DNA of 62,838 nt, counting the filler, from Platydemus manokwari (lineage: Eukaryota): the NCBI GenBank assembly GCA_037951405.1. It is 6 parts of 6 records of this genome, joined end to end, with 100 filler letters (N's around TTAATTAATTAA, not from the genome) between each part and the next. Parts side by side here need not be neighbours in the genome. Positions count along the whole stretch, not along the records: positions 53,032 to 62,838 come from JBBMOY011201988.1; 5 more parts are not named here. One strand, 5' to 3'. Positions 53,032-62,838 of this stretch are shown here, one piece after another (the stretch's first letter is position 1; each line of letters opens with the position of its first letter). Made by a program: the position numbers and the translations under genes. A model generated the notes under the pieces. That model had not been told where the DNA came from, made no database searches, and worked only from the letters and a program-made list of their open reading frames with translations.

Positions 53032-54140
53032 ATAAATAAATAAAGGGACTCACGCTGTTGAGTTGTGCTCTAACAACTGACAAATTAACATTCAACCACA
53101 ACCCAACAGAAGCATTGGATTGGGTTGATTCACATATTCCATCAAATGAAAGGAGTAAAACATTGTGGTGTAAAATAAGAGAGAGTATTAAATATGCTGT
53201 AAAGAAAACATAAACAACGGTTTCTTTCACTATTATCAACGGTGATATAATGCTTAGAGTTCAACAAAGCTTTACAATCAATGGTTCCTATGACGAAAGT
53301 AGTGCCATAATGGAACCAAAGAAAATCAAAGAAACATCAAAACTGCTGAGACAATGTTTTGTACGATCTCACCAATTGAACTGGACTAATCAAATCAGAA
53401 ATTGACGCTATAGCAGCTACTCAGAAGCCATTAGCCCAATGTGGTCAAAAGTAGTTTTAATGGGTTATGGCTAAATTCAGATTTATTAATAATGCAACAG
53501 AATCATGGACATCCATGCCAAGGAAAGTGTTAACAATACGGATTACAGAGTCTTTATAAAGAAAAAATGTCGATTTACGGAATCCAAATTAAGGGTAGAT
53601 CTTCAACTAATAAATGATCGAAAATTCACGATCGTCCTAGTCGATGTAAAATGCCCCATGAACCAAGCTGCTTTAATGGCTGAAACAGCACAAAGAAATA
53701 TAGAAAAATAGAAACTTCCGAAATGCGATCAAAAAAGAGGCCCGATTAAACTGTGGAACTGTCCACTTTTGTTGTAGGAGTTCTCGAGACTTGGCAAACA
53801 CAGACGAACGATACAGTACTAAAGAAATTGGGAATGAATAAGATAATGATAAATAAGGTAGCTCTTGCCTGCATAAAGCCGAGTATTAATGCGAGCTATC
53901 TGCAATAGAAGTTCCATACGGGAAAAAAGACGGCAACAAAAACAGTCTTAAAAATAAGGGAAGAAGATTTCCAAGACAACATCGACTGGATGACGGAGAC
54001 AGAATTGAATAAGATGTTGAATTGATTGTATGATTAAACTAGCGAACTGTTATTCATGGATCGATCGAAAGAAAGTTCCATGTACATCCCATATTTTAAT
54101 GTATGGGTAAATCGAATATCAATGTTTATGAATAAATATT
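53032..54140 (+). mobile_element. RLE-type non-LTR retrotransposon 3' end (endonuclease and 3' UTR), degenerate
   Basis: SKLRVDLQL...IVLVDVKCP...RNIEK* then FVVGVLETW...VLKKLG, the PD-(D/E)xK RLE motifs of the NeSL/R5/Utopia group; AATAAA near 54132. Confidence 0.75.
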
Positions 54141-54472
54141 AGTATTATATTCACTTGCGAATCTTTATTACTAGTATCACGATTGATATCATTGAAAATT
54201 AAAAAGTTAGTCTGTTGAAATATTTATATTTCAATTTGTTTGGTTGAATTTACAATTTATTGGAAATAGTTAAAATTCATTGGTATTTTCAGTATATCTA
54301 CTCGTTAATTATTACAGAAGCAATCGTATATGTAGTTTTCACAAATTTTTACTTGATTTACGTTTTCAGTAAAATTAATTGATATCATTATTTATTAACC
54401 AGTTAACTGAAATTAACTCTATTTGAAAATTAAATGAGGAAATCATTTTGCTTTAAACGATTCTTTGTGCAG

Positions 54473-56557
54473 GGCTATATTTATGAAAGAATAATAAAAA
54501 GAATTGAACCTCCTAGACGAGCTCCCTTCTTTATTACTGTCCTCACGCAATATAAACTTCAACAAAATCTTCTCGAAGATAAATGCAAGAAAATCTTGTC
54601 GAGGAACAGTATAACAACACCTCCTTTAGTTAAAACCGTAATTCGAAGTCAAGGTGAGATCAAATAATTTTAATGCTAATTAGTATTTTATTAAAATAAG
54701 GATCTGAGAATGATTATATTATATTCTCTACCGTTCGATCAATTAGAAATAAAGATGATATTAATGATTTTCCAACCCCTGGTTGGGAAAAACAACACCT
54801 GGGATTCATAACGGATCCAAATCAAATCAATGTGGCATTAACTAGAGCAAAAAAGGGTCTTATCATCATTGGTGAGAATATAAAGTTTTTATCACATTTA
54901 ATAGACTGCAGGCTATAAAATTTCTTGCATGAATTACTACCAAAGCAACTATCATTAAGTACTTTAATTGCGATTTCCTCACGTGACCGACAATCAACGT
55001 AATTTCTTGGCAACTATTTTCTTGATCCACAACGTAATTATTCTCTCTTTTCTTAAAAGTTTTTGAAGTCTGTGAGCCACATGGAAGATATTTCTATGGT
55101 TTGGTTTATTCTTCCTGATGACACGACTGTATCCTGAGTTAGTGTTTGTCGTAATCAATATAATAAATGTTTATGTTTTGTTAATAATTGTAACAGAGCT
55201 TATGATTGTTGATTGGCTTTCTTTCTAAAGTCACATAGATGATTGGTTAAGAATAGAGCAGACATCTTCTTTGGTGTAGATTTTGTTAGTTGTGGGTATT
55301 ATAAAGATCATTAAAGTCGATCTAAAGAAACTTATCATCGATAAAGGCTTTTACTGTCTTCCAAATTGGTTCTCTGTTTCAGCTTATTCTCGCTTATCCT
55401 TATCCTGAGAATTCCCGATTATTTTTGATAACGAACAGTTCTCGTAATCAGTTTCCCATTTTCTATTGTGTATGTTCGAGCTTAATTGGTTTATGTTAAT
55501 ATATCGTGGATTAATGTTGGCCTCTTATTATTATTTCTCCAATTTAATCTTCTTGTGGTTATTTTCGGGAAATCTACGAGTTTTGTTTTGGTTGGCTGAA
55601 TAAAGATTGTTATTGTTGGTTTCGAACAAGATTGGATACAGTAGAGTTAAAGCCAGAATTCAATCCAGTGTGTGTAGTTATTAATTCCAATAATAATAGC
55701 AATAACTATTTTCCGCAAATTTGTAAATAGCAATATGAACACAACGCAAGAAATAATCAATATTCGTTTAATCTGATTATTCAAAACTTTAAATTCATTT
55801 CTCATGGAAACTGTCGATTTTTTTAAATCACGAGTTATGTTGCGATAAAAGTTATTAAGGTCCATTTCGTAATAGAAATTATAGCAAGCACCAATTTAAC
55901 AGTTATTCGGATCTGAAAATAATAAAGTGTGCTTTTTTTCGATACAGATTATATGAAAAATTGGGGAATATCAATATTAATTTTATTAGAACATGGTACA
56001 TGTAAATTGTAAAAAAAACATACAATTGATTATTTCTGTAATAATTTTGACATGAATAGGATGAAAGTTGACTTAATATTTCAACATTACTTTGATGATT
56101 ATCCGATTAAAAATATTCAAAATACTAATATCTCATTTGAATTTATCACGTGGTTTAATTTATGGATTAAAACATTTGATGTAAATAATATTAGTGAGAC
56201 AGTGTGAAAGTAAATAATATACATTTAATTTGTTGACATGTCCTAACTAGTCATATAAATATACATTCGGGATTAAATGAAGTGAATATTTAATAAAAAA
56301 TTGTTGATTCAATCTCTTATTATTTAGTAAAAAGATTTATTTTAAATCATCTCGGACTTGTTTTGGACGATTTTTTAAAATTGCTTCTTTAGTAAATGAT
56401 AAATGGTGAACAAATCCAGATTTATAATAATAAAAAATAATATATTTTTGTAGGAAACAGTCACCTTCTCAGTGTGAACAAAATATGGAGAAATTTGATA
56501 ATCAATATGAAAAAGCGAGACTGTTTCTTTTATGATTACATGGACTTTATTTTATAA
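54473..56557 (+). CDS. Last three exons of a HELZ2-like UPF1/SF1B RNA helicase
   Basis: Exons 54473-54653, 54701-54871, 56454-56557 join in frame: ITVLTQYKLQ...KTVIRSQGSENDYIIFSTVRS...PTPGWEKQHLGFITDPNQINVALTRAKKGLIIIGNSHLLSVNKIWRNLI...*. These are helicase motifs IV-VI; SQG and PTxGW..LGF..D.NQINV are HELZ2-like. Confidence 0.9.
54960..55900 (-). mobile_element. Possible LTR/env-like retroelement debris in the helicase's last intron
   Basis: LTR-like composition at ~55050-55300 and a short minus ORF with a hydrophobic segment (55647-55865). Confidence 0.25.
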
Positions 56558-58249
56558 CTTTCTCTTAGTTTTACTAGTTTTATGTAATCAGATGTATATA
56601 TTTTTGTTATTAGTAATATCAGGTTTTATAATTTTCACTTAATCTTGAAGTTTTAGAAAATATATTTAGCTTATATTTATTAGTTTCTTATTATTTAATA
56701 TCAAAGTGATATGAATATAAGATGTTAGATAATATTTAATGAAATAACATATTAAATCCTCCAAATTTAGTAAAATTTCGATATTTTTCCAAAATCACAT
56801 CGAATACACTTACAAGATATTTTAACGATAAAAACAAACTTCTATTCACTACAAAACAATAATTATGGTACTTGTCTCAACAAATAAGAATCACAATTTT
56901 CGGGAATTGCGATGTGGTTTCGATATTCCTAGATTTTATTCTATATATTTAAGACCTTACAATGATTCATACGTACTGGTGTAATATTAGGTGTAGAAGC
57001 ACTTTATATGTATTCGCCTGATTTAACATGAAATCCATATACTGCACAACCCCTTGTGTCGTATTCCTATGTGTCAATCTAAAACAATTTTGACTAAAGT
57101 TTGAACAATTTTTCGGAAATGTTTGGGCATTGTAGTGTGGTTTAGTTTTCAGAAGAGCATTGGCTCGTATTGTTTTTTAGCTTATACCTGACTCCAAAGG
57201 CGCATTAAATAAATGATAAAAAGTATTTTAAATATAAATAAATAAATCATCACAAAATATAGAAATATATAATTAGTCTATCAATACCGACTTACGATAA
57301 TATAAAAACAAATACGAATTACAAATAACAAATATCAAATGTGAAGTAACAATTAATAACAAACAACCATTTATAACATATAACCAGGTGGATTATTTAT
57401 AATTGATGATTTAATCCCTATTGCATTGAATTTGTTAGATCCTTGTATAAAGACCTACAAGGTTCCTTATTATTAATTTGGGATAGTTGGAACTTATAAA
57501 AGTTACTAATAGTTAGGTAAAGTCAGGTTTTAGTGACACTGTTATATACAATGGTGAAACTATTTGTCGTTAAAATAAACATGAATGATCGTAAATTTTG
57601 TAAAACAAGAATTAAATTACTACTGTATAGTATTTTCTCCTTTTTAGTTCATGTAGTCCGTTTTCGAAAGAACTATTTTAAATAGAGTCCTTGATGCAGT
57701 CAGTAAATGAGTTTCTCTTAGGCGAAGTGGATTAGCTTATATTTCGCTTGCTTTAGGAAGTCAATAATAAATGTCATCAATAGTATTATGTGGGTCAATC
57801 AATAATCGTGTTTAGACTCCTACGATTCTGTAATTCAATTTTTGTGATCATTAAATAATTACTTCTATTTTTATAATTATTAAATTATATTTGAGTACTT
57901 TCTATTTTTAGTAAGGTTTTAATGTCTAGATTTTTATACTCATTTATTATTATTATTTTAGATTAGTTCAGTATCCAAAATATGTTCCCCGTAAAAAATT
58001 CTCGTACTGAGAACAATTAATTTTTTCTAAATAGTTTTGTTGAGTTTTAATTAGTCCTGGTTATTTGAAAGCATTTATAGTACAATTTTCAGGAGGAAGC
58101 ACATGATAAAGCATGATAAAGATATAATTATTTTTATTATTTCAATTATGCTAATGACAAGCTTTCTAACATGTTCTTGCACCTCCGCTTGGGTTTGATT
58201 CTTTCGGATTAAATAATGCATGCTAGCTAGGTTTTCTCTTATATCATTA

Positions 58250-58512
58250 GATCAGATATTTTGATACAATAAATACAAATGATTTAACATTTCCAACACC
58301 AATTGATGAAATTAAGAAATTTGAAAATAATAATAATTTTAAAATAAATGTTTACAGATTAAATAAACGATCTCAAATAAAAGAATCAAACGGAGAAGAC
58401 ACACGATTATATACTGAAAGAAAAGATTATCAAATATATTCAATTTATATATCTCAAAAAGAAAATTATTCTCAAGATATAAAACTTCTATATTTTAAAA
58501 CTTCAAAATATT
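58250..58512 (+). mobile_element. Polinton/Maverick-type DNA polymerase B N-terminal fragment
   Basis: DTINTNDLTFPTPIDEIKKFENNNNFKINVY...IYSIYIS...IKLLYF matches the Polinton polB motif FPxxxxxIxKFExxN..INVY..IYP..I.LL. Confidence 0.6.
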
Positions 58513-58514
58513 AA

Positions 58515-60268
58515 ATGTGGTTGCGAAAGATGTACTCAAACCTTCAACTGCTCCATATGCCCACTGAAGCTATCAATACCCTACCAACAAATGAACTTCT
58601 GAAGCCAATCCAAACTCCGAATACAATCACAAACGATATCTGCAAAACAACTTCCTACTAGCTGCTAATGATTTTGCACACAAACTCATGCATATTTCTG
58701 TGCTCTTGTTTTGGTCATGCAAAACCTGCAACAAAATGGCCCAAAAAATATCCAACAAATATCTACGAAATGGAAGAAATTCAGCAAATACTTCCACATC
58801 AAAATGACAAATTATAACAACATCCACAACAAGTAACACTCTATCAATCACTCAAAACTCTCTACCAGACAACGAAGAACCCGATCAAACCAATTAGACT
58901 AACCACTCAACCATTACCTGACTTCAAAACAATAGATATTGACATTGATGATGTAATCCTCAAACACGACTGGCTCGATGGACTCTCCATAGACTGAATC
59001 CGACTCAGATGAGGATATACAATCACAATGACTAACCAGCTATGCGATCGAGGTTTTTCTACATAACAAAATCACAGATCAAGCCGCCAACATATTCATA
59101 AAACCACAACCGGCAAATGCTATCCTAAAAAATGACTTCAAAACTTTCTACGAATCATTTCCATTCAGAAAACTTGCCACTAGCGAAACTGTTTACTATC
59201 TAATTCACTAGAACAACAACCACTGGAATCTCTACATCGCAGATCGCCTGAAGTTGTCATCACACTTCATCGACAACTCGAACCTCAAAAAAATCTCGCT
59301 CGCTGAAATTGTAAATACGTTCGAGAAACTTAGAAAATCCTCACCGGGCGATGACGGGATCACATACAAAGATTGGAGACAGCTAGATCCGCAGCACCTA
59401 TACATCCAATCTCTATTAAACAGAATACTAAAAACAAAAACCATCCCAAACCAGTAGAAGGAATGTAATACTAACTTACTAATAAAACCAAGCAAGCAGG
59501 ACCTATCTCATCTCATAACCTCGTGGAGACCAATCGAGATCACGGATACTTCATATCGAATATTCACCACAATCTTCAACCTCAGAATTCTCAAATGGAT
59601 CGATGCCGGCAACTTACTATCTCCAAATCTAAAAGCAATGTTCGCTTCTGACCGATGGGCTGAACACAGCACTTACCTCTTCTCGTTGCAGGAATATGCA
59701 TCACAACATAACAAAGACCTCCATCTGTGCTAGATCGACTTCAAAGAAGCTTTCCCAAGCCTAGCCCACGATGTAATCTGGTACACGCTCAAATCGATGG
59801 GGTGCAACTCTCACTATATCGAAATGATTCAGGCCTTAAACGAAGACAGTGGGATGATCAAGACTTCACCAATACCGATCTATCATCATGTCAAACAAGG
59901 TTGCCCTTGTCAATGGTACTGTTCTACCTCTCAGCCGACTTTATTCTGCACTCATCATCAGATATTCCAGAACAGCTAACTGTCCAAAACAGCGTATTCT
60001 CCACACTGGCATACGCTGCTGACATTGTTATCTTAGCAAACACTGGAGAAAACTTAGAACTCAGGCTCCACCACATAAACGAAATAAACGAAATTCAACT
60101 CATAATCAACGCCAACAAATGTGGTTAACTCACTAAAAACCAGAGAAACCGGATAGATATTCAAATCAACGAGAAACAAATATCAATCACTGATGCAAAT
60201 AATCTATACAGATACTTTGGAGTACTGTTTGAACTCTCGAAGCGTATTCCAGTCAACAACATTTTGTA
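58515..60268 (+). mobile_element. RLE-clade (NeSL/Utopia-like) non-LTR retrotransposon, zinc finger + RT, inactive
   Basis: FNCSICP zinc-finger start; KSSPGDDGITYKDWRQLDP; SWRPIEITDTSYRIF; AEH; *IDFKEAFPSLAH; VKQGCP/LSMVLF; LAYAADIV (dead YADD); INANKC; YRYFGV. Two in-frame stops and a frameshift. Confidence 0.9.
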
Positions 60269-61501
60269 AACAATCATATTTATTGCTTTATTTAATAATA
60301 CCCAAAGCAAGACCATTTTCCGTGGTACTATTTATTAATATAACTCAATATATTTTTCAAAATTATCAATGTTGTGGATTATCATTAAACATTACAGCTC
60401 CATCATTCTTTTGAATTTATACTTCTTATCCATTTCTTAGTGAAATTTGTAAACTTTTAAAGATTTCTTTAAATAACTGATAAATTCTGTCATTTTTTGA
60501 TATCACTACCATTTTCCTTTTAATTATCTCTCAGATTGAGCATTCGGTTTTCTTCATCATCTCTATAAATTCTGCTTCGGGTTTTTCTTCTATGAATTTC
60601 AAATTTTTAAATGTTTCATAAATTTTTTTATTATGATTAATTATTAAAATTATTGATTCAAAGAATCAATAAAGTAAAATGTTAATCAATGTTTTCGTTA
60701 TCTTTATCAATGTTTATTTAATAAGCCCTAATTACTTCAGATCTCGACACTTATTGGTAAAAATAGTCACATTATTAGTAATTTTAATAATTTCATTCAA
60801 CATAACGTTTATTTGTCATTTTTAGTTGTTCTTTCAATTTCTGCTCTATCGTCGTCTGCATATTTTCCATTCAAATATAACTTCTCCTTTCTTGCACTGT
60901 AGCGTATAATATGTATTCAATTTCTGATAATATTTATAAATCTCATTTATCGTTTTAAATTATATTTTGTATTTTGATAATATTTCATTTGTTTCTATTC
61001 TAAACTTTTTGATTCTTTGTGATTTAAAACAATTACAACAATCTACATGTATTGCAATCGATTTTAAATCACTTATCAATTGTTTCTTCAATCGTTACCG
61101 TTTCGCGTTTTTCTTTTTCCATTTTCAATCATTTTTCCTTGTTTATTTTCTATTATTTACTTTTATTTTCTGTTATTATAGTTAGTATTCAATTTTTCTT
61201 TATTTTCATGTTTAGTTTAATATTGTGAATATTTTTCACATGTATTTCTTGAGAGCTTTTCTGCATACCCTGTATAAATATCATTTTTATGTACAAATAA
61301 CTTTAATAATTCAACCACTTAAAATTTAATAATTATTTGATATAAGGGTTTTATATAATCTAGTTTTCAATCATATAACTGATATAATTTAAATCAAGCA
61401 GAAAATAAATATAAAAGTAATAAAAAATCAACTTTATTAAATAATTTGAATAAATCATTTCTATAAAAAATAATATTTTATTTTAAAAAATAACATTTTA
61501 A

Positions 61502-62695
61502 TCAATATTGTTCCAATTTTATGTTTATTGGAAATTCAAGTCGTCTTCTCTTGAATTCATTGACATCTTCAGTGTCAATTAATTTCCTTTTTATATTTTC
61601 TTTTATATTATGATTTATTTCCATTTTATCAATCAATACACTTTCATTTTTAATTAACTTGACAGGCGACGTGAAATATTCAAATTTATTCGAAATCGCT
61701 TGCAATTTAATTCCATCTCTATCCATTTCATTGGATTTCAATTCAATATTATCAGAAATACTTCTTTTCATTTGGCAGATCTCTTTGTTTTCATTGTCAA
61801 TATTTACTAATCTTACTAGTTCTTCCACTGATTTCAGATCACTGCTTTTAGAAGCATTTTCTATTATCTTACTTTTAGTCCTGACCCAATAACGAACCGA
61901 GTTGATTGTTGTATCAAGTTTTCGAGCAATTTCTCGCAATTTAAATCCTTCTTGATACATTACAATAGCTTTCAATTTGGTTTCTGTAGGAACTGTTAGT
62001 TTCTGTTTTATTCTACTAGCATTGAAATTTTCAATAAGTTTTATATTTTCAATTGCATTATTTGATATCAGATCACTGTAATTAGATACTTTTTCTATTA
62101 TCTTATTTTTATTCTTGTACCAATAACGAACAAGGTCGGCTGATGTATCAAATTTTTTCGCTATTTCTTGCAACTTGAATCCTTCATGATACATCACAAT
62201 AGCTTTCAATTTAGTATCTGTAGAAACGTTTCGTTTCTGTTTTAATCTATTCGCATTTAGATCTCCAAAAATGTTTATATTTTCAATTTCATTCTGTGAT
62301 ATCAGATCACCACCGTTAGATACTTTTCCTATTATCTTACTTTTATTATTGACCCAATAATGGATAAGATTGAATGATGTCTGGAATCTATTTGCAATTT
62401 CTTGCAACGTGAATCCTTCTTGATACATTTCAATAGCTTTTAATTTAGTATCTGTAGAATACATTCGTCTTTTCAATTTCAAATCATTTATATATCTATC
62501 TGCATTATTTTTCATTTTTTCAATATATTTTGTTGTTATGTCCTTAATTTCGTCATTCACTTTATTGACTTTATTGATCAAATACATATTTTGCTCAGAG
62601 GACATTTCGAAATTTTTCGGTATTTCATTTAACTGAATTCTTTCATTATCAAAATCATTTGATTCATGAATTTGTACCACTGATTTACTTTGCAT
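61502..62695 (-). CDS. Intronless 397-aa protein with 3 intact + 1 degenerate tandem HTH units (CENP-B N-terminal/psq/Brinker-like), putative DNA-binding protein
   Basis: 78-aa repeat K.KR..STDTKLKAI.MY.EGF.LQEIA..F.TS...V.YW...K.KII; no DDE domain; C-terminal KRKLIDTEDVNEFKRRRL. Intact 1.2-kb ORF in very AT-rich DNA. Confidence 0.85.
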   Translation of the reverse strand: MQSKSVVQIHESNDFDNERIQLNEIPKNFEMSSEQNMYLINKVNKVNDEIKDITTKYIEKMKNNADRYINDLKLKRRMYSTDTKLKAIEMYQEGFTLQEIANRFQTSFNLIHYWVNNKSKIIGKVSNGGDLISQNEIENINIFGDLNANRLKQKRNVSTDTKLKAIVMYHEGFKLQEIAKKFDTSADLVRYWYKNKNKIIEKVSNYSDLISNNAIENIKLIENFNASRIKQKLTVPTETKLKAIVMYQEGFKLREIARKLDTTINSVRYWVRTKSKIIENASKSSDLKSVEELVRLVNIDNENKEICQMKRSISDNIELKSNEMDRDGIKLQAISNKFEYFTSPVKLIKNESVLIDKMEINHNIKENIKRKLIDTEDVNEFKRRRLEFPINIKLEQY

Positions 62696-62838
62696 AATTT
62701 GATTATTTTTAATATAATAAAATTTATTTTTAAAAAAAAACCAAAAATTAAATTAAAATATTTTTATGTGAAATTCTATTTGTCTAAATTAATTTAAAAT
62801 TATATCAAGAAATATAAATATATTAATGAGATAATGAT

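What the first reader, a model, noticed from the sequence alone, without database searches (positions are those of the whole stretch)
61502..62695. Tandem-HTH array protein: transposase-type DNA-binding units multiplied, with variable recognition helices, NLS and SUMO motifs
Seen: an intact intronless ORF made of 78-aa (234-nt) units. The scaffold is conserved (TKLKAI.MY.EGF.L.EIA, YW, K.KII) but the predicted recognition helix differs in each unit: TSFNLIHYW, TSADLVRYW, TTINSVRYW. A fourth unit is decayed. The C-terminus has a bipartite-NLS pattern (KRK-x10-KRRR) and psi-KxE SUMO consensus sites (IKNE, terminal IKLE). Known: this HTH type is the TIR-binding N-terminal domain of pogo/Tigger transposases and CENP-B, normally one copy followed by a second HTH and a DDE domain. 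Domesticated CENP-B homologues silence TEs in fission yeast. Inference: a lineage-specific modular DNA reader, analogous to zinc-finger arrays, that may act as a transposon or satellite repressor. It is intact while every TE ORF in the window is dead.
Basis: partly seen in the sequence, partly recalled or inferred. Interest (0 to 1): 0.72.

Follow-up and report, generated by a model that had tools for sequence, protein, structure and literature searches.

The report
Tandem helix-turn-helix array protein gene
An intact 397-residue gene encodes a protein built from three (plus one decayed) tandem copies of a small transposase-type DNA-binding helix-turn-helix unit; it belongs to a scattered, so far unnamed family of such arrays, and its design is a variation on known multi-HTH DNA readers (Cbp1, Pipsqueak, Myb), not something unprecedented.

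Summary
Window 61502-62695 (minus strand) is an open 397-codon ORF with three in-register 78-aa (234-nt) units, a truly decayed fourth, a basic bipartite-NLS-like cluster and a terminal IKLE. AlphaFold2 models each unit confidently as a basic arm, a tri-helical HTH and a short fourth helix. Long helices flank the array.

The frame has been kept by selection. The 103 substitutions separating the units predict 5.5-7.3 stop codons under neutrality; none is seen, and no indel (P 0.0003-0.0035).

It is not an orphan. An exhaustive search found 52 relatives, nearly all tandem HTH arrays of 2-11 units. All 20 looked up are unnamed and sit mostly on short metagenome contigs. None of the 20 scanned has a DDE domain.

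The unit is closest to Pfam HTH_23. CENP-B_N is borderline for the query, but it is the top family for several AT-rich relatives, and CENP-B is the top structural match (Z 7.5).

Most likely it is a stand-alone nuclear DNA-binding protein whose consecutive HTHs read adjacent sub-sites, as in archaeal Cbp1.

The transposon/satellite-repressor role, diversifying selection on helix 3 and SUMOylation are not shown.

Verdict: a new variant of a known kind, of moderate interest.

The parts
61502..62695 (-). Complete ORF, 397 codons plus stop (TGA at 61502-61504)
   Evidence: open-frame chance about 2e-19
62468..62599 (-). N-terminal long helix, aa 33-76 (pLDDT 87-95); matches only coiled coils, so a possible oligomerisation helix (inferred)
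   Evidence: AlphaFold2 model; VIA-align rows for residues 29-76 are all coiled coils
62252..62485 (-). Unit 1 (aa 71-148): basic arm, HTH core, acidic linker
   Evidence: (unit HMM i-E 3.9e-35)
62018..62251 (-). Unit 2 (aa 149-226)
   Evidence: HTH_23 24.3 bits, CENP-B_N 21.0 bits; single-unit model, core pLDDT 92-95
61784..62017 (-). Unit 3 (aa 227-304)
   Evidence: HTH_23 26.0 bits
62348..62374 (-). Predicted helix 3 (recognition helix) of unit 1, FNLIHYWVN
62114..62140 (-). Predicted helix 3 of unit 2, ADLVRYWYK
61880..61906 (-). Predicted helix 3 of unit 3, INSVRYWVR
61550..61783 (-). Decayed fourth unit (aa 305-382); modelled mainly as long helices, not as an HTH
61538..61591 (-). Bipartite-NLS-like basic cluster, KRK-x10-KRRR (aa 369-386)
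   Evidence: strict pattern in 1.8% of shuffles
61511..61522 (-). Near-terminal IKLE (aa 392-395), a psi-KxE motif that recurs in the C-terminal tails of relatives
   Evidence: 2 of 16 independent relatives against 0.06 expected, P = 0.0016

Best explanation
The ORF is a real protein-coding gene, or was one until very recently. It encodes a stand-alone, probably nuclear, sequence-specific DNA-binding protein. Its DNA-binding region arose by intragenic tandem duplication of a 234-nt segment that encodes one transposase-type tri-helical HTH (HTH_23 / CENP-B_N-like).

Each unit has three parts: a basic N-terminal arm, a basic three-helix core followed by a short fourth helix, and an acidic spacer. 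I infer that the three working units lie side by side along the DNA and that each helix 3 reads its own sub-site. The array would then recognise a long composite or reiterated target, as shown experimentally for the three duplicated HTHs of archaeal Cbp1.

The flanking long helices may mediate oligomerisation. The C-terminal basic cluster may direct nuclear import, and the conserved terminal IKLE may be a modification or docking motif.

Shown: the ORF, the repeat anatomy, the HTH fold prediction, the selection on the reading frame, the existence of an array family, and the absence of a transposase catalytic domain nearby.

Inferred: DNA binding, the mode of reading, nuclear localisation, and any target such as transposon ends or satellites.
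For: - ORF and repeat anatomy.
- Pfam HTH_23 at 1.5e-16 with three stretches; HTH_28, HTH_Tnp_1 and CENP-B_N also above their cutoffs.
- AlphaFold2 gives pLDDT above 90 for each core, with an H1-H2-H3-H4 layout.
- The best structural matches are all DNA-bound HTHs: CENP-B 1hlv (Z 7.3/7.5, 2.5-2.6 A over 61-63 residues), Brinker, IstA, Tc3, Dan.
- Frame selection: 103 substitutions from the unit consensus predict 5.5-7.3 stops; none is seen (P 0.0003-0.0035) and there are no indels.
- dN/dS between units is about 0.45 in the core and at least 1 in the linkers.
- Charge pattern per unit: arm +3/+4, core +2 to +5, linker -1 to -4.
- 52 relatives, nearly all tandem arrays of 2-11 units.
- In P0004/P0003/P0008 the units are conserved position by position between proteins, so arrays are maintained as arrays.
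- No DDE domain in 20 relatives or among the ORFs of the piece.
- The unit profile matches both HTHs of Cbp2 (2lvs, E 1.1e-5).
- The Cbp1 mechanism is documented in PMC10883916 and PMC3597662.
Against:
- Only 143 nt upstream of the ATG are visible, so an upstream exon or transposon end cannot be excluded.
- Overall dN/dS between units is 0.7-1.0, and differences fall equally on all three codon positions. Amino-acid constraint outside the core is therefore weak.
- Structural Z scores are below 8, and Foldseek gave no match at E <= 1e-3.
- The 20 relatives looked up are all anonymous, and 18 of them lie on contigs of about 6 kb or less, so no member of the family has a tested function.
Confidence: 0.6

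Rival explanations
1. The ORF belongs to a mobile element. It could be the DNA-binding first exon or an accessory ORF of a pogo/Tigger-like or other DNA transposon, present in many copies. Its intactness would then reflect recent transposition and not a host function.
For: The HTH type is the one used by transposases: HTH_23, HTH_Tnp_1 and CENP-B_N, with IstA and Tc3 among the structural matches. The neighbourhood holds a decayed retroelement. The upstream side is cut 143 nt from the ATG.
Against: None of the ORFs scanned in the 8.4 kb downstream of the gene shows a DDE or other transposase domain. No terminal inverted repeats were found in the piece. None of the 20 relatives scanned has a catalytic domain. 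The relative L001 is a lone ORF in very AT-rich flanks with no clear inverted repeats. The units have diverged to dS 0.3-0.55 while the frame stayed open; this indicates long-term selection, not a recent burst. No transposase with three or more tandem copies of this HTH is known to me (own knowledge).
Confidence: 0.2
2. It is a relic: a formerly functional or by-chance open ORF that is no longer expressed or selected.
For: Overall dN/dS between units is 0.7-1.0, and differences fall evenly on the codon positions. The fourth unit, and possibly an N-terminal one, have decayed. No protein more than 50% identical to it is present in the 1.8-billion-representative library.
Against: A 416-codon open frame has a chance probability of about 2e-19. 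The absence of stops after 103 substitutions has P <= 0.0035, and there are no indels. Core dN/dS is about 0.45. The cores fold with high confidence.
Confidence: 0.1
3. It is a real protein, but the HTH units serve something other than sequence-specific double-stranded DNA reading, for example RNA binding, protein scaffolding or condensate formation.
For: The spacers are long and acidic, and the flanking helices are coiled-coil-like. Psq-family Dan combines DNA binding with condensate behaviour (PMC11178893). Mitoribosome-associated HTH-like proteins appear among the structural matches.
Against: The top sequence and structure matches are DNA-bound HTHs. The arms and cores are basic. The conserved W, G and hydrophobic pattern is that of DNA-binding transposase HTHs.
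Confidence: 0.07

Closest known systems
Cbp1 / Cbp2, archaeal CRISPR DNA repeat-binding proteins (NCBIfam NF040595; PDB 2LVS)
   Same: These are small proteins made of two or three HTH domains that arose by domain duplication and are joined by linkers, including a basic one. In Cbp1 the HTHs align 5' to 3' along one repeat, each reading a sub-site, and the protein also binds transposon-associated sites (PMC10883916, PMC3597662). Cbp2 is the best sequence-profile match of the unit among solved structures, and both of its HTHs match (E 1.1e-5). Two bacterial relatives of the query pass the Cbp1 model cutoff.
   Different: The query scores 33 bits against a cutoff of 140. Its units are 78 aa with about 30-aa acidic spacers, not the roughly 45-aa units with short linkers of Cbp1. 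It has flanking long helices and an NLS-like cluster. It sits in AT-rich DNA that looks eukaryotic, with no CRISPR.
CENP-B N-terminal domain / pogo-Tigger transposase HTH (Pfam PF04218; PDB 1HLV)
   Same: It is the top structural match for a unit (Z 7.3-7.5, rmsd 2.5-2.6 A, 61-63 residues, 21% identity). The whole protein scores 29.4 bits against a cutoff of 21.2. CENP-B_N is the top Pfam family for the AT-rich relatives P0020, P0042, P0052 and P0035.
   Different: Only unit 2 reaches about the cutoff on its own (21.0-21.4 bits). CENP-B is not found by the sequence profile in the PDB. There is no second HTH_Tnp_Tc5 domain, no DDE_1 and no dimerisation domain of the CENP-B kind. Here the same HTH is repeated, whereas CENP-B pairs two different ones.
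Pipsqueak (Psq) family of Drosophila
   Same: It is a pogo-derived HTH family (Siegmund and Lehmann 2002, as cited in PMC10027918). Pipsqueak itself carries four tandem Psq repeats that bind GAGA repeats (own knowledge: Lehmann et al. 1998). The Psq-type proteins Dan (2elh) and Brinker (2glo) are among the best structural matches.
   Different: Pfam HTH_psq is not among the 25 best families for the query and does not appear for the relatives. There is no BTB domain, and the unit is longer (78 aa against about 50).
Myb R1R2R3 and paired / Tc3 bipartite domains
   Same: These are tandem tri-helical HTH units in one polypeptide that bind adjacent DNA sub-sites. Cbp2's authors name Pax and Myb as its closest structural kin (PMC3597662). 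Tc3 is among the structural matches.
   Different: The query has no significant Pfam match to Myb_DNA-binding or PAX. It has one conserved W per unit, not the Myb tryptophan triad.

Membership tests
Pfam HTH_23 (PF13384, homeodomain-like HTH) | Whole-protein score above the gathering cutoff (24.6 bits) | tested here: met
   60.1 bits, E 1.5e-16, three stretches. Single units score 19.5, 24.3-24.9 and 26.0 bits.
CENP-B_N / pogo-Tigger HTH (PF04218) | Score above the gathering cutoff (21.2 bits) | tested here: inconclusive
   The whole protein scores 29.4 bits with one stretch. Alone, only unit 2 scores 21.0-21.4 bits; units 1 and 3 are not listed. Several AT-rich relatives pass clearly.
CENP-B_N / pogo-Tigger HTH (PF04218) | Fold similar to CENP-B residues 1-65 | tested here: met
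   Top VIA-align match, Z 7.3 and 7.5 at rmsd 2.5-2.6 A; Foldseek probability 0.93 at rmsd 2.0 A. Z below 8 is not decisive.
pogo/Tigger transposase or CENP-B protein architecture | A second HTH (HTH_Tnp_Tc5) and a DDE_1 domain following the first HTH | tested here: not met
   No such families in the protein, in the ORFs of the piece, or in 20 relatives.
Pipsqueak family (Pfam HTH_psq PF05225) | Significant match to the Psq motif model | tested here: not met
   Not among the 25 best of 30 families at E <= 1, so at best E > 0.12. Absent for the relatives.
Cbp1 (NCBIfam NF040595) | Score above the curated cutoff (140 bits) | tested here: not met
   33.3 bits.
Cbp1 (NCBIfam NF040595) | Several HTH domains derived from internal duplication, joined by linkers | tested here: met
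   Three units of 234 nt at 66-76% nt identity. The query's units are closer to each other (65-68% in the core) than to any unit of another protein.
Cbp1 (NCBIfam NF040595) | Binds a reiterated DNA repeat, with the HTHs aligned along it | not testable with these tools
   Needs binding assays.
Myb/SANT repeats (PF00249) | Match to the Myb_DNA-binding model, and three regularly spaced tryptophans per repeat | tested here: not met
   No Myb hit for the query. There is one conserved W per unit.
SUMO-consensus substrate | psi-KxE sites more frequent than chance, or conserved | tested here: inconclusive
   The count is at chance (2 against 1.36, P = 0.39). The terminal IKLE, however, recurs in the C-terminal tails of P0042 and P0004/P0008 (P = 0.0016). 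Modification itself is not testable here.

The most novel reading that the evidence does not exclude
The gene is one member of an evolvable class of modular HTH-array DNA readers. In this class, unit number (2-11 in the relatives) and the exposed residues of helix 3 would change quickly, so that the arrays track long or reiterated targets such as transposon ends or satellites. That would be an HTH-based counterpart of KRAB zinc-finger or TALE arrays, arising independently in AT-rich eukaryotes and in bacteria. In some bacteria the arrays are fused to a signal-peptide-like or ankyrin-like N-terminus, which would suit host-directed effectors.
Probability: 0.12. Interest if true: 0.8.

Novelty: new variant of a known kind. 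Interest (0 to 1): 0.45.

Why it matters
Tandem zinc fingers and TALE repeats are the textbook modular DNA readers. Tandem HTH arrays are known only from a few small cases: Cbp1/Cbp2, Pipsqueak and Myb.

This locus, together with the 52 array-type relatives it recovered (up to 11 units; the 20 looked up are all unnamed), suggests that multiplying a transposase-type HTH is a recurrent and largely unannotated way of building long-site DNA-binding proteins.

If binding assays showed one sub-site per unit, the family would offer a simple system for studying how DNA-binding specificity grows by internal duplication. It might also reveal how hosts, or symbionts, target repeated DNA.

As it stands, it is a well-supported gene of predicted DNA-binding function with no known target.

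Tried and rejected
- Word-index homologue searches found nothing with the query. With the subgroup profile they returned only P0036.
- The ESM Atlas gave only sub-threshold leads (0.82 and 0.80).
- Foldseek gave no match at E <= 1e-3, for the whole model or for the single unit.
- Phage and plasmid tblastn: no match.
- Viral contig scans with the query and with P0001: none.
- Metagenome scan with the query: none. With P0053 it recovered only that protein's own 2.1-kb contig, L001.
- Genome (bacteria/archaea) scans with P0006 and P0002: none, so the bacterial carriers remain unnamed.
- Rfam on the piece: nothing.
- No terminal inverted repeats around the ORF.
- PDB phmmer with the whole protein gave only weak RcsB-type hits.
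- Literature search for tandem-HTH or HTH_23 arrays found no description of this family.
- Rejected: a chance ORF (probability about 2e-19); a neutral pseudogene (P <= 0.0035); bacterial or viral contamination (the composition matches the flanks and there are no phage, plasmid or viral hits).

Full report
**Observation.** The piece 53032-62838 contains, on the minus strand at 61502-62695, an ATG-to-TGA ORF of 397 codons. The open frame extends 19 codons further upstream to an in-frame stop. At the local composition (stop probability 0.099 per codon), a 416-codon open frame has a chance probability of about 2e-19.

Tandem Repeats Finder reports a 234-nt period over 61829-62459, with 2.7 copies, 80% matches and no indels. 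The repeat finder reports three copies at exactly 234-nt spacing.

A fourth unit (aa 305-382) is a genuine decayed copy in register. It has 43.7% nt identity to the other units, against 31.6 +/- 1.6% for shuffles and 32.6% on average out of register. A unit HMM hits it at i-E 3.8e-4. A further remnant in the N-terminal 70 residues is not significant (i-E 0.23).

**Anatomy and fold.** Pfam assigns three stretches to HTH_23 (E 1.5e-16). HTH_28, HTH_Tnp_1, Sigma70_r4_2 and CENP-B_N also score above their cutoffs.

AlphaFold2 on an alignment with 22 relatives gives mean pLDDT 76.9, with values above 90 in each core. A single-unit model gives 81.3, with 92-95 in the core. Each unit is modelled as H1, H2 and H3 (the helix-turn-helix) plus a short H4, followed by a less confident spacer helix.

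Each unit carries a basic arm ahead of H1 (net +3/+4), a basic core (+2 to +5) and an acidic spacer (-1 to -4). The array is flanked by a confident long helix at aa 33-76, which matches only coiled coils, and by long helices covering the decayed fourth unit and the C-terminus.

**Is it a maintained gene?** Expression could not be examined, so I tested the reading frame itself. The three units differ from their consensus by 42, 14 and 47 substitutions. Placing the same numbers of substitutions at random yields a mean of 5.5 stop codons with the observed spectrum (itself already censored for stops) and 7.3 with the flank composition. All three units stay open in only 0.35% and 0.03% of trials respectively. 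There are also no indels.

Synonymous divergence between units is 0.31-0.55, so the duplications are not recent. Amino-acid constraint is uneven. dN/dS is about 0.41-0.49 in the HTH core and 1.1-2.2 in the spacers, which gives 0.7-1.0 overall, and the three codon positions are hit about equally. So there is selection for an open frame and for the HTH scaffold, and little or none on the spacers.

**Relatives.** The word-index search found nothing. The exhaustive phmmer search of 1.84 billion representatives found 52 proteins at E <= 1e-3, 10 at <= 1e-10 and one at 8e-45 (P0001, 38% identity). Nothing above 50% identity exists in that library.

Nearly all hits are themselves tandem arrays. The initial unit HMM finds 2-11 units per protein at periods of 42-110 aa, and an iterated version finds 295 units in all.

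About 17 of the hits are N/K/I-rich, like the query. The 20 proteins looked up are all unnamed; 18 are singletons and the other two have one further member each. Eighteen of them come from ENA, JGI or Logan contigs of about 6 kb or less; P0002 and P0006 sit on longer contigs. The one such contig I could fetch (L001, 2110 nt) has 15-26% GC and holds a lone 505-codon ORF between very AT-rich flanks. This looks eukaryotic, but the organism is unknown.

The remaining hits are compositionally bacterial arrays of 48-59-aa units.

The query's three units resemble each other more (65-68% in the core) than they resemble any unit elsewhere (49-58%). The three-unit expansion therefore happened within this lineage. 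In P0004/P0003/P0008, by contrast, unit i of one protein matches unit i of the other (56-71%) better than it matches its own neighbours (35-58%). Arrays are thus inherited and kept as arrays.

- For: CENP-B(1-65) is the top VIA-align match for both models (Z 7.3 and 7.5, 2.5-2.6 A, 61-63 residues, 21% identity). Brinker, IstA, Tc3 and Drosophila Dan come next. CENP-B_N is the best Pfam family for the AT-rich relatives P0020, P0042, P0052 and P0035, and second best for P0001 and P0010.
- Against: taken one at a time, the query's units score best with HTH_23, and only unit 2 reaches the CENP-B_N cutoff. A nine-unit profile searched against PDB sequences finds Cbp2 (2lvs, both HTHs, E 1.1e-5), a designed 'CAP repeat', RcsB and the IS21-family IstA, but not CENP-B. 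All Z scores are below 8, and Foldseek finds nothing at E <= 1e-3.
- HTH_psq and Myb models do not match.

**Transposon or host gene?** Pfam scans of 18 of the ORFs of at least 45 codons in the piece showed no DDE or other transposase domain. None of the 20 relatives scanned has one either. No terminal inverted repeats flank the ORF within the piece, nor in L001.

The only neighbours are a helicase fragment (AAA_12, 54700-54915, E 7.9e-15) and a GC-richer, frame-broken RT-like stretch at about 58.2-60.1 kb. However, only 143 nt upstream of the ATG are available, and copy number is unknown. I leave a mobile-element origin at 0.2.

**Short motifs.** The KRK-x10-KRRR cluster satisfies a strict bipartite pattern that occurs in 1.8% of shuffles. 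This makes a nuclear localisation signal plausible but not proven.

The number of psi-KxE sites is at chance (P = 0.39). The specific near-terminal IKLE is a different matter. It recurs in the C-terminal tails of P0042 (which ends ...KKIKLE) and of P0004/P0008, and nowhere else among the 53 proteins. That is 2 of 16 independent relatives against 0.06 expected (P = 0.0016). It is probably a conserved short linear motif; whether it is SUMOylated is untested.

**Helix 3.** Within the query, 7 of the 9 helix-3 positions vary among the three units, against 16 of 38 in the rest of the core (one-sided Fisher P = 0.059). This is suggestive only.

Across 59 units of the AT-rich subgroup, the most variable core columns are helix-3 positions 1, 2 and 5 (3.7, 3.3 and 3.1 bits), together with two exposed positions in the turn and in helix 2. 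K5, A8, G15, I21, A22 and W35 are nearly fixed. This is the pattern expected of any HTH family with diverse targets. It is compatible with different sub-site specificities, but it is not evidence of diversifying selection.

**Mechanism.** The best experimentally grounded template is Cbp1. Its three HTH domains arose by duplication and are joined by linkers. They align 5' to 3' along one CRISPR repeat, each reading a sub-site, with additional binding at transposon-associated sites (PMC10883916). In Cbp2, a basic linker tethers two HTHs (PMC3597662).

By analogy, the three units here, each with its own basic arm, would read three adjacent or spaced sub-sites. The spacers of about 30 aa would allow wider or flexible spacing. 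The N-terminal coiled-coil-like helix could double the array by dimerisation. All of this is inferred.

**Comparison and novelty.** Tandem HTH readers are a known kind: Cbp1/Cbp2, Pipsqueak's four Psq repeats (own knowledge; the family's pogo origin is cited in PMC10027918), Myb, and paired/Tc3.

This protein fails the model cutoffs of Cbp1 (33 against 140 bits), Psq and Myb. It lacks the CENP-B/pogo architecture. It belongs to an unnamed array family that I could not find described. I therefore file it as a new variant of a known kind, of moderate interest.

**Limits.**
- No N stretch lies inside the piece, and none was filled.

Noticed in passing
window 54700-54915 (+), with a weak second piece at 54434-54664 (+): This is the C-terminal end of an SF1 (UPF1-like) helicase: Pfam AAA_12 at E 7.9e-15, and E 0.038 for the upstream piece. 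It is either an exon of a neighbouring gene or a fragment.
   Followed up: partly
window about 58200-60130 (+): A GC-richer island (38-44% against 23-29% around it) carries reverse-transcriptase-like pieces in two frames, interrupted by a stop. RVT_1 scores only E 0.056. It looks like a decayed non-LTR-like retroelement.
   Followed up: partly
relatives P0002, P0006, P0011, P0012, P0039, P0051 (no loci fetched): Bacterial-type proteins hold 8-11 near-identical HTH units. P0002 starts with a signal-peptide-like segment and P0006 with an ankyrin-like region (both read by eye). P0011 and P0006 pass the NCBIfam Cbp1 cutoff. They could be secreted or host-directed DNA binders. Two genome scans could not name the carriers.
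   Followed up: partly
relatives P0009, P0010, P0052, P0023, P0047 (C-termini): A subgroup of the AT-rich array proteins shares a different conserved C-terminal module (roughly SDYF..I..RY.YL), which the query lacks.
   Followed up: no
L001:1923-2036: A 57-nt tandem duplication (89% identity) lies directly after the stop codon of the 505-aa array gene on JGI contig Ga0307474_10105372. The whole contig is 15-26% GC.
   Followed up: no
PDB 8vd6 (against unit profile A3): A solved 'CAP repeat' protein of five 33-aa units is the second-best sequence-profile match of the unit (E 2.5e-5). Each of its repeats matches the turn-helix 2-helix 3 stretch.
   Followed up: no
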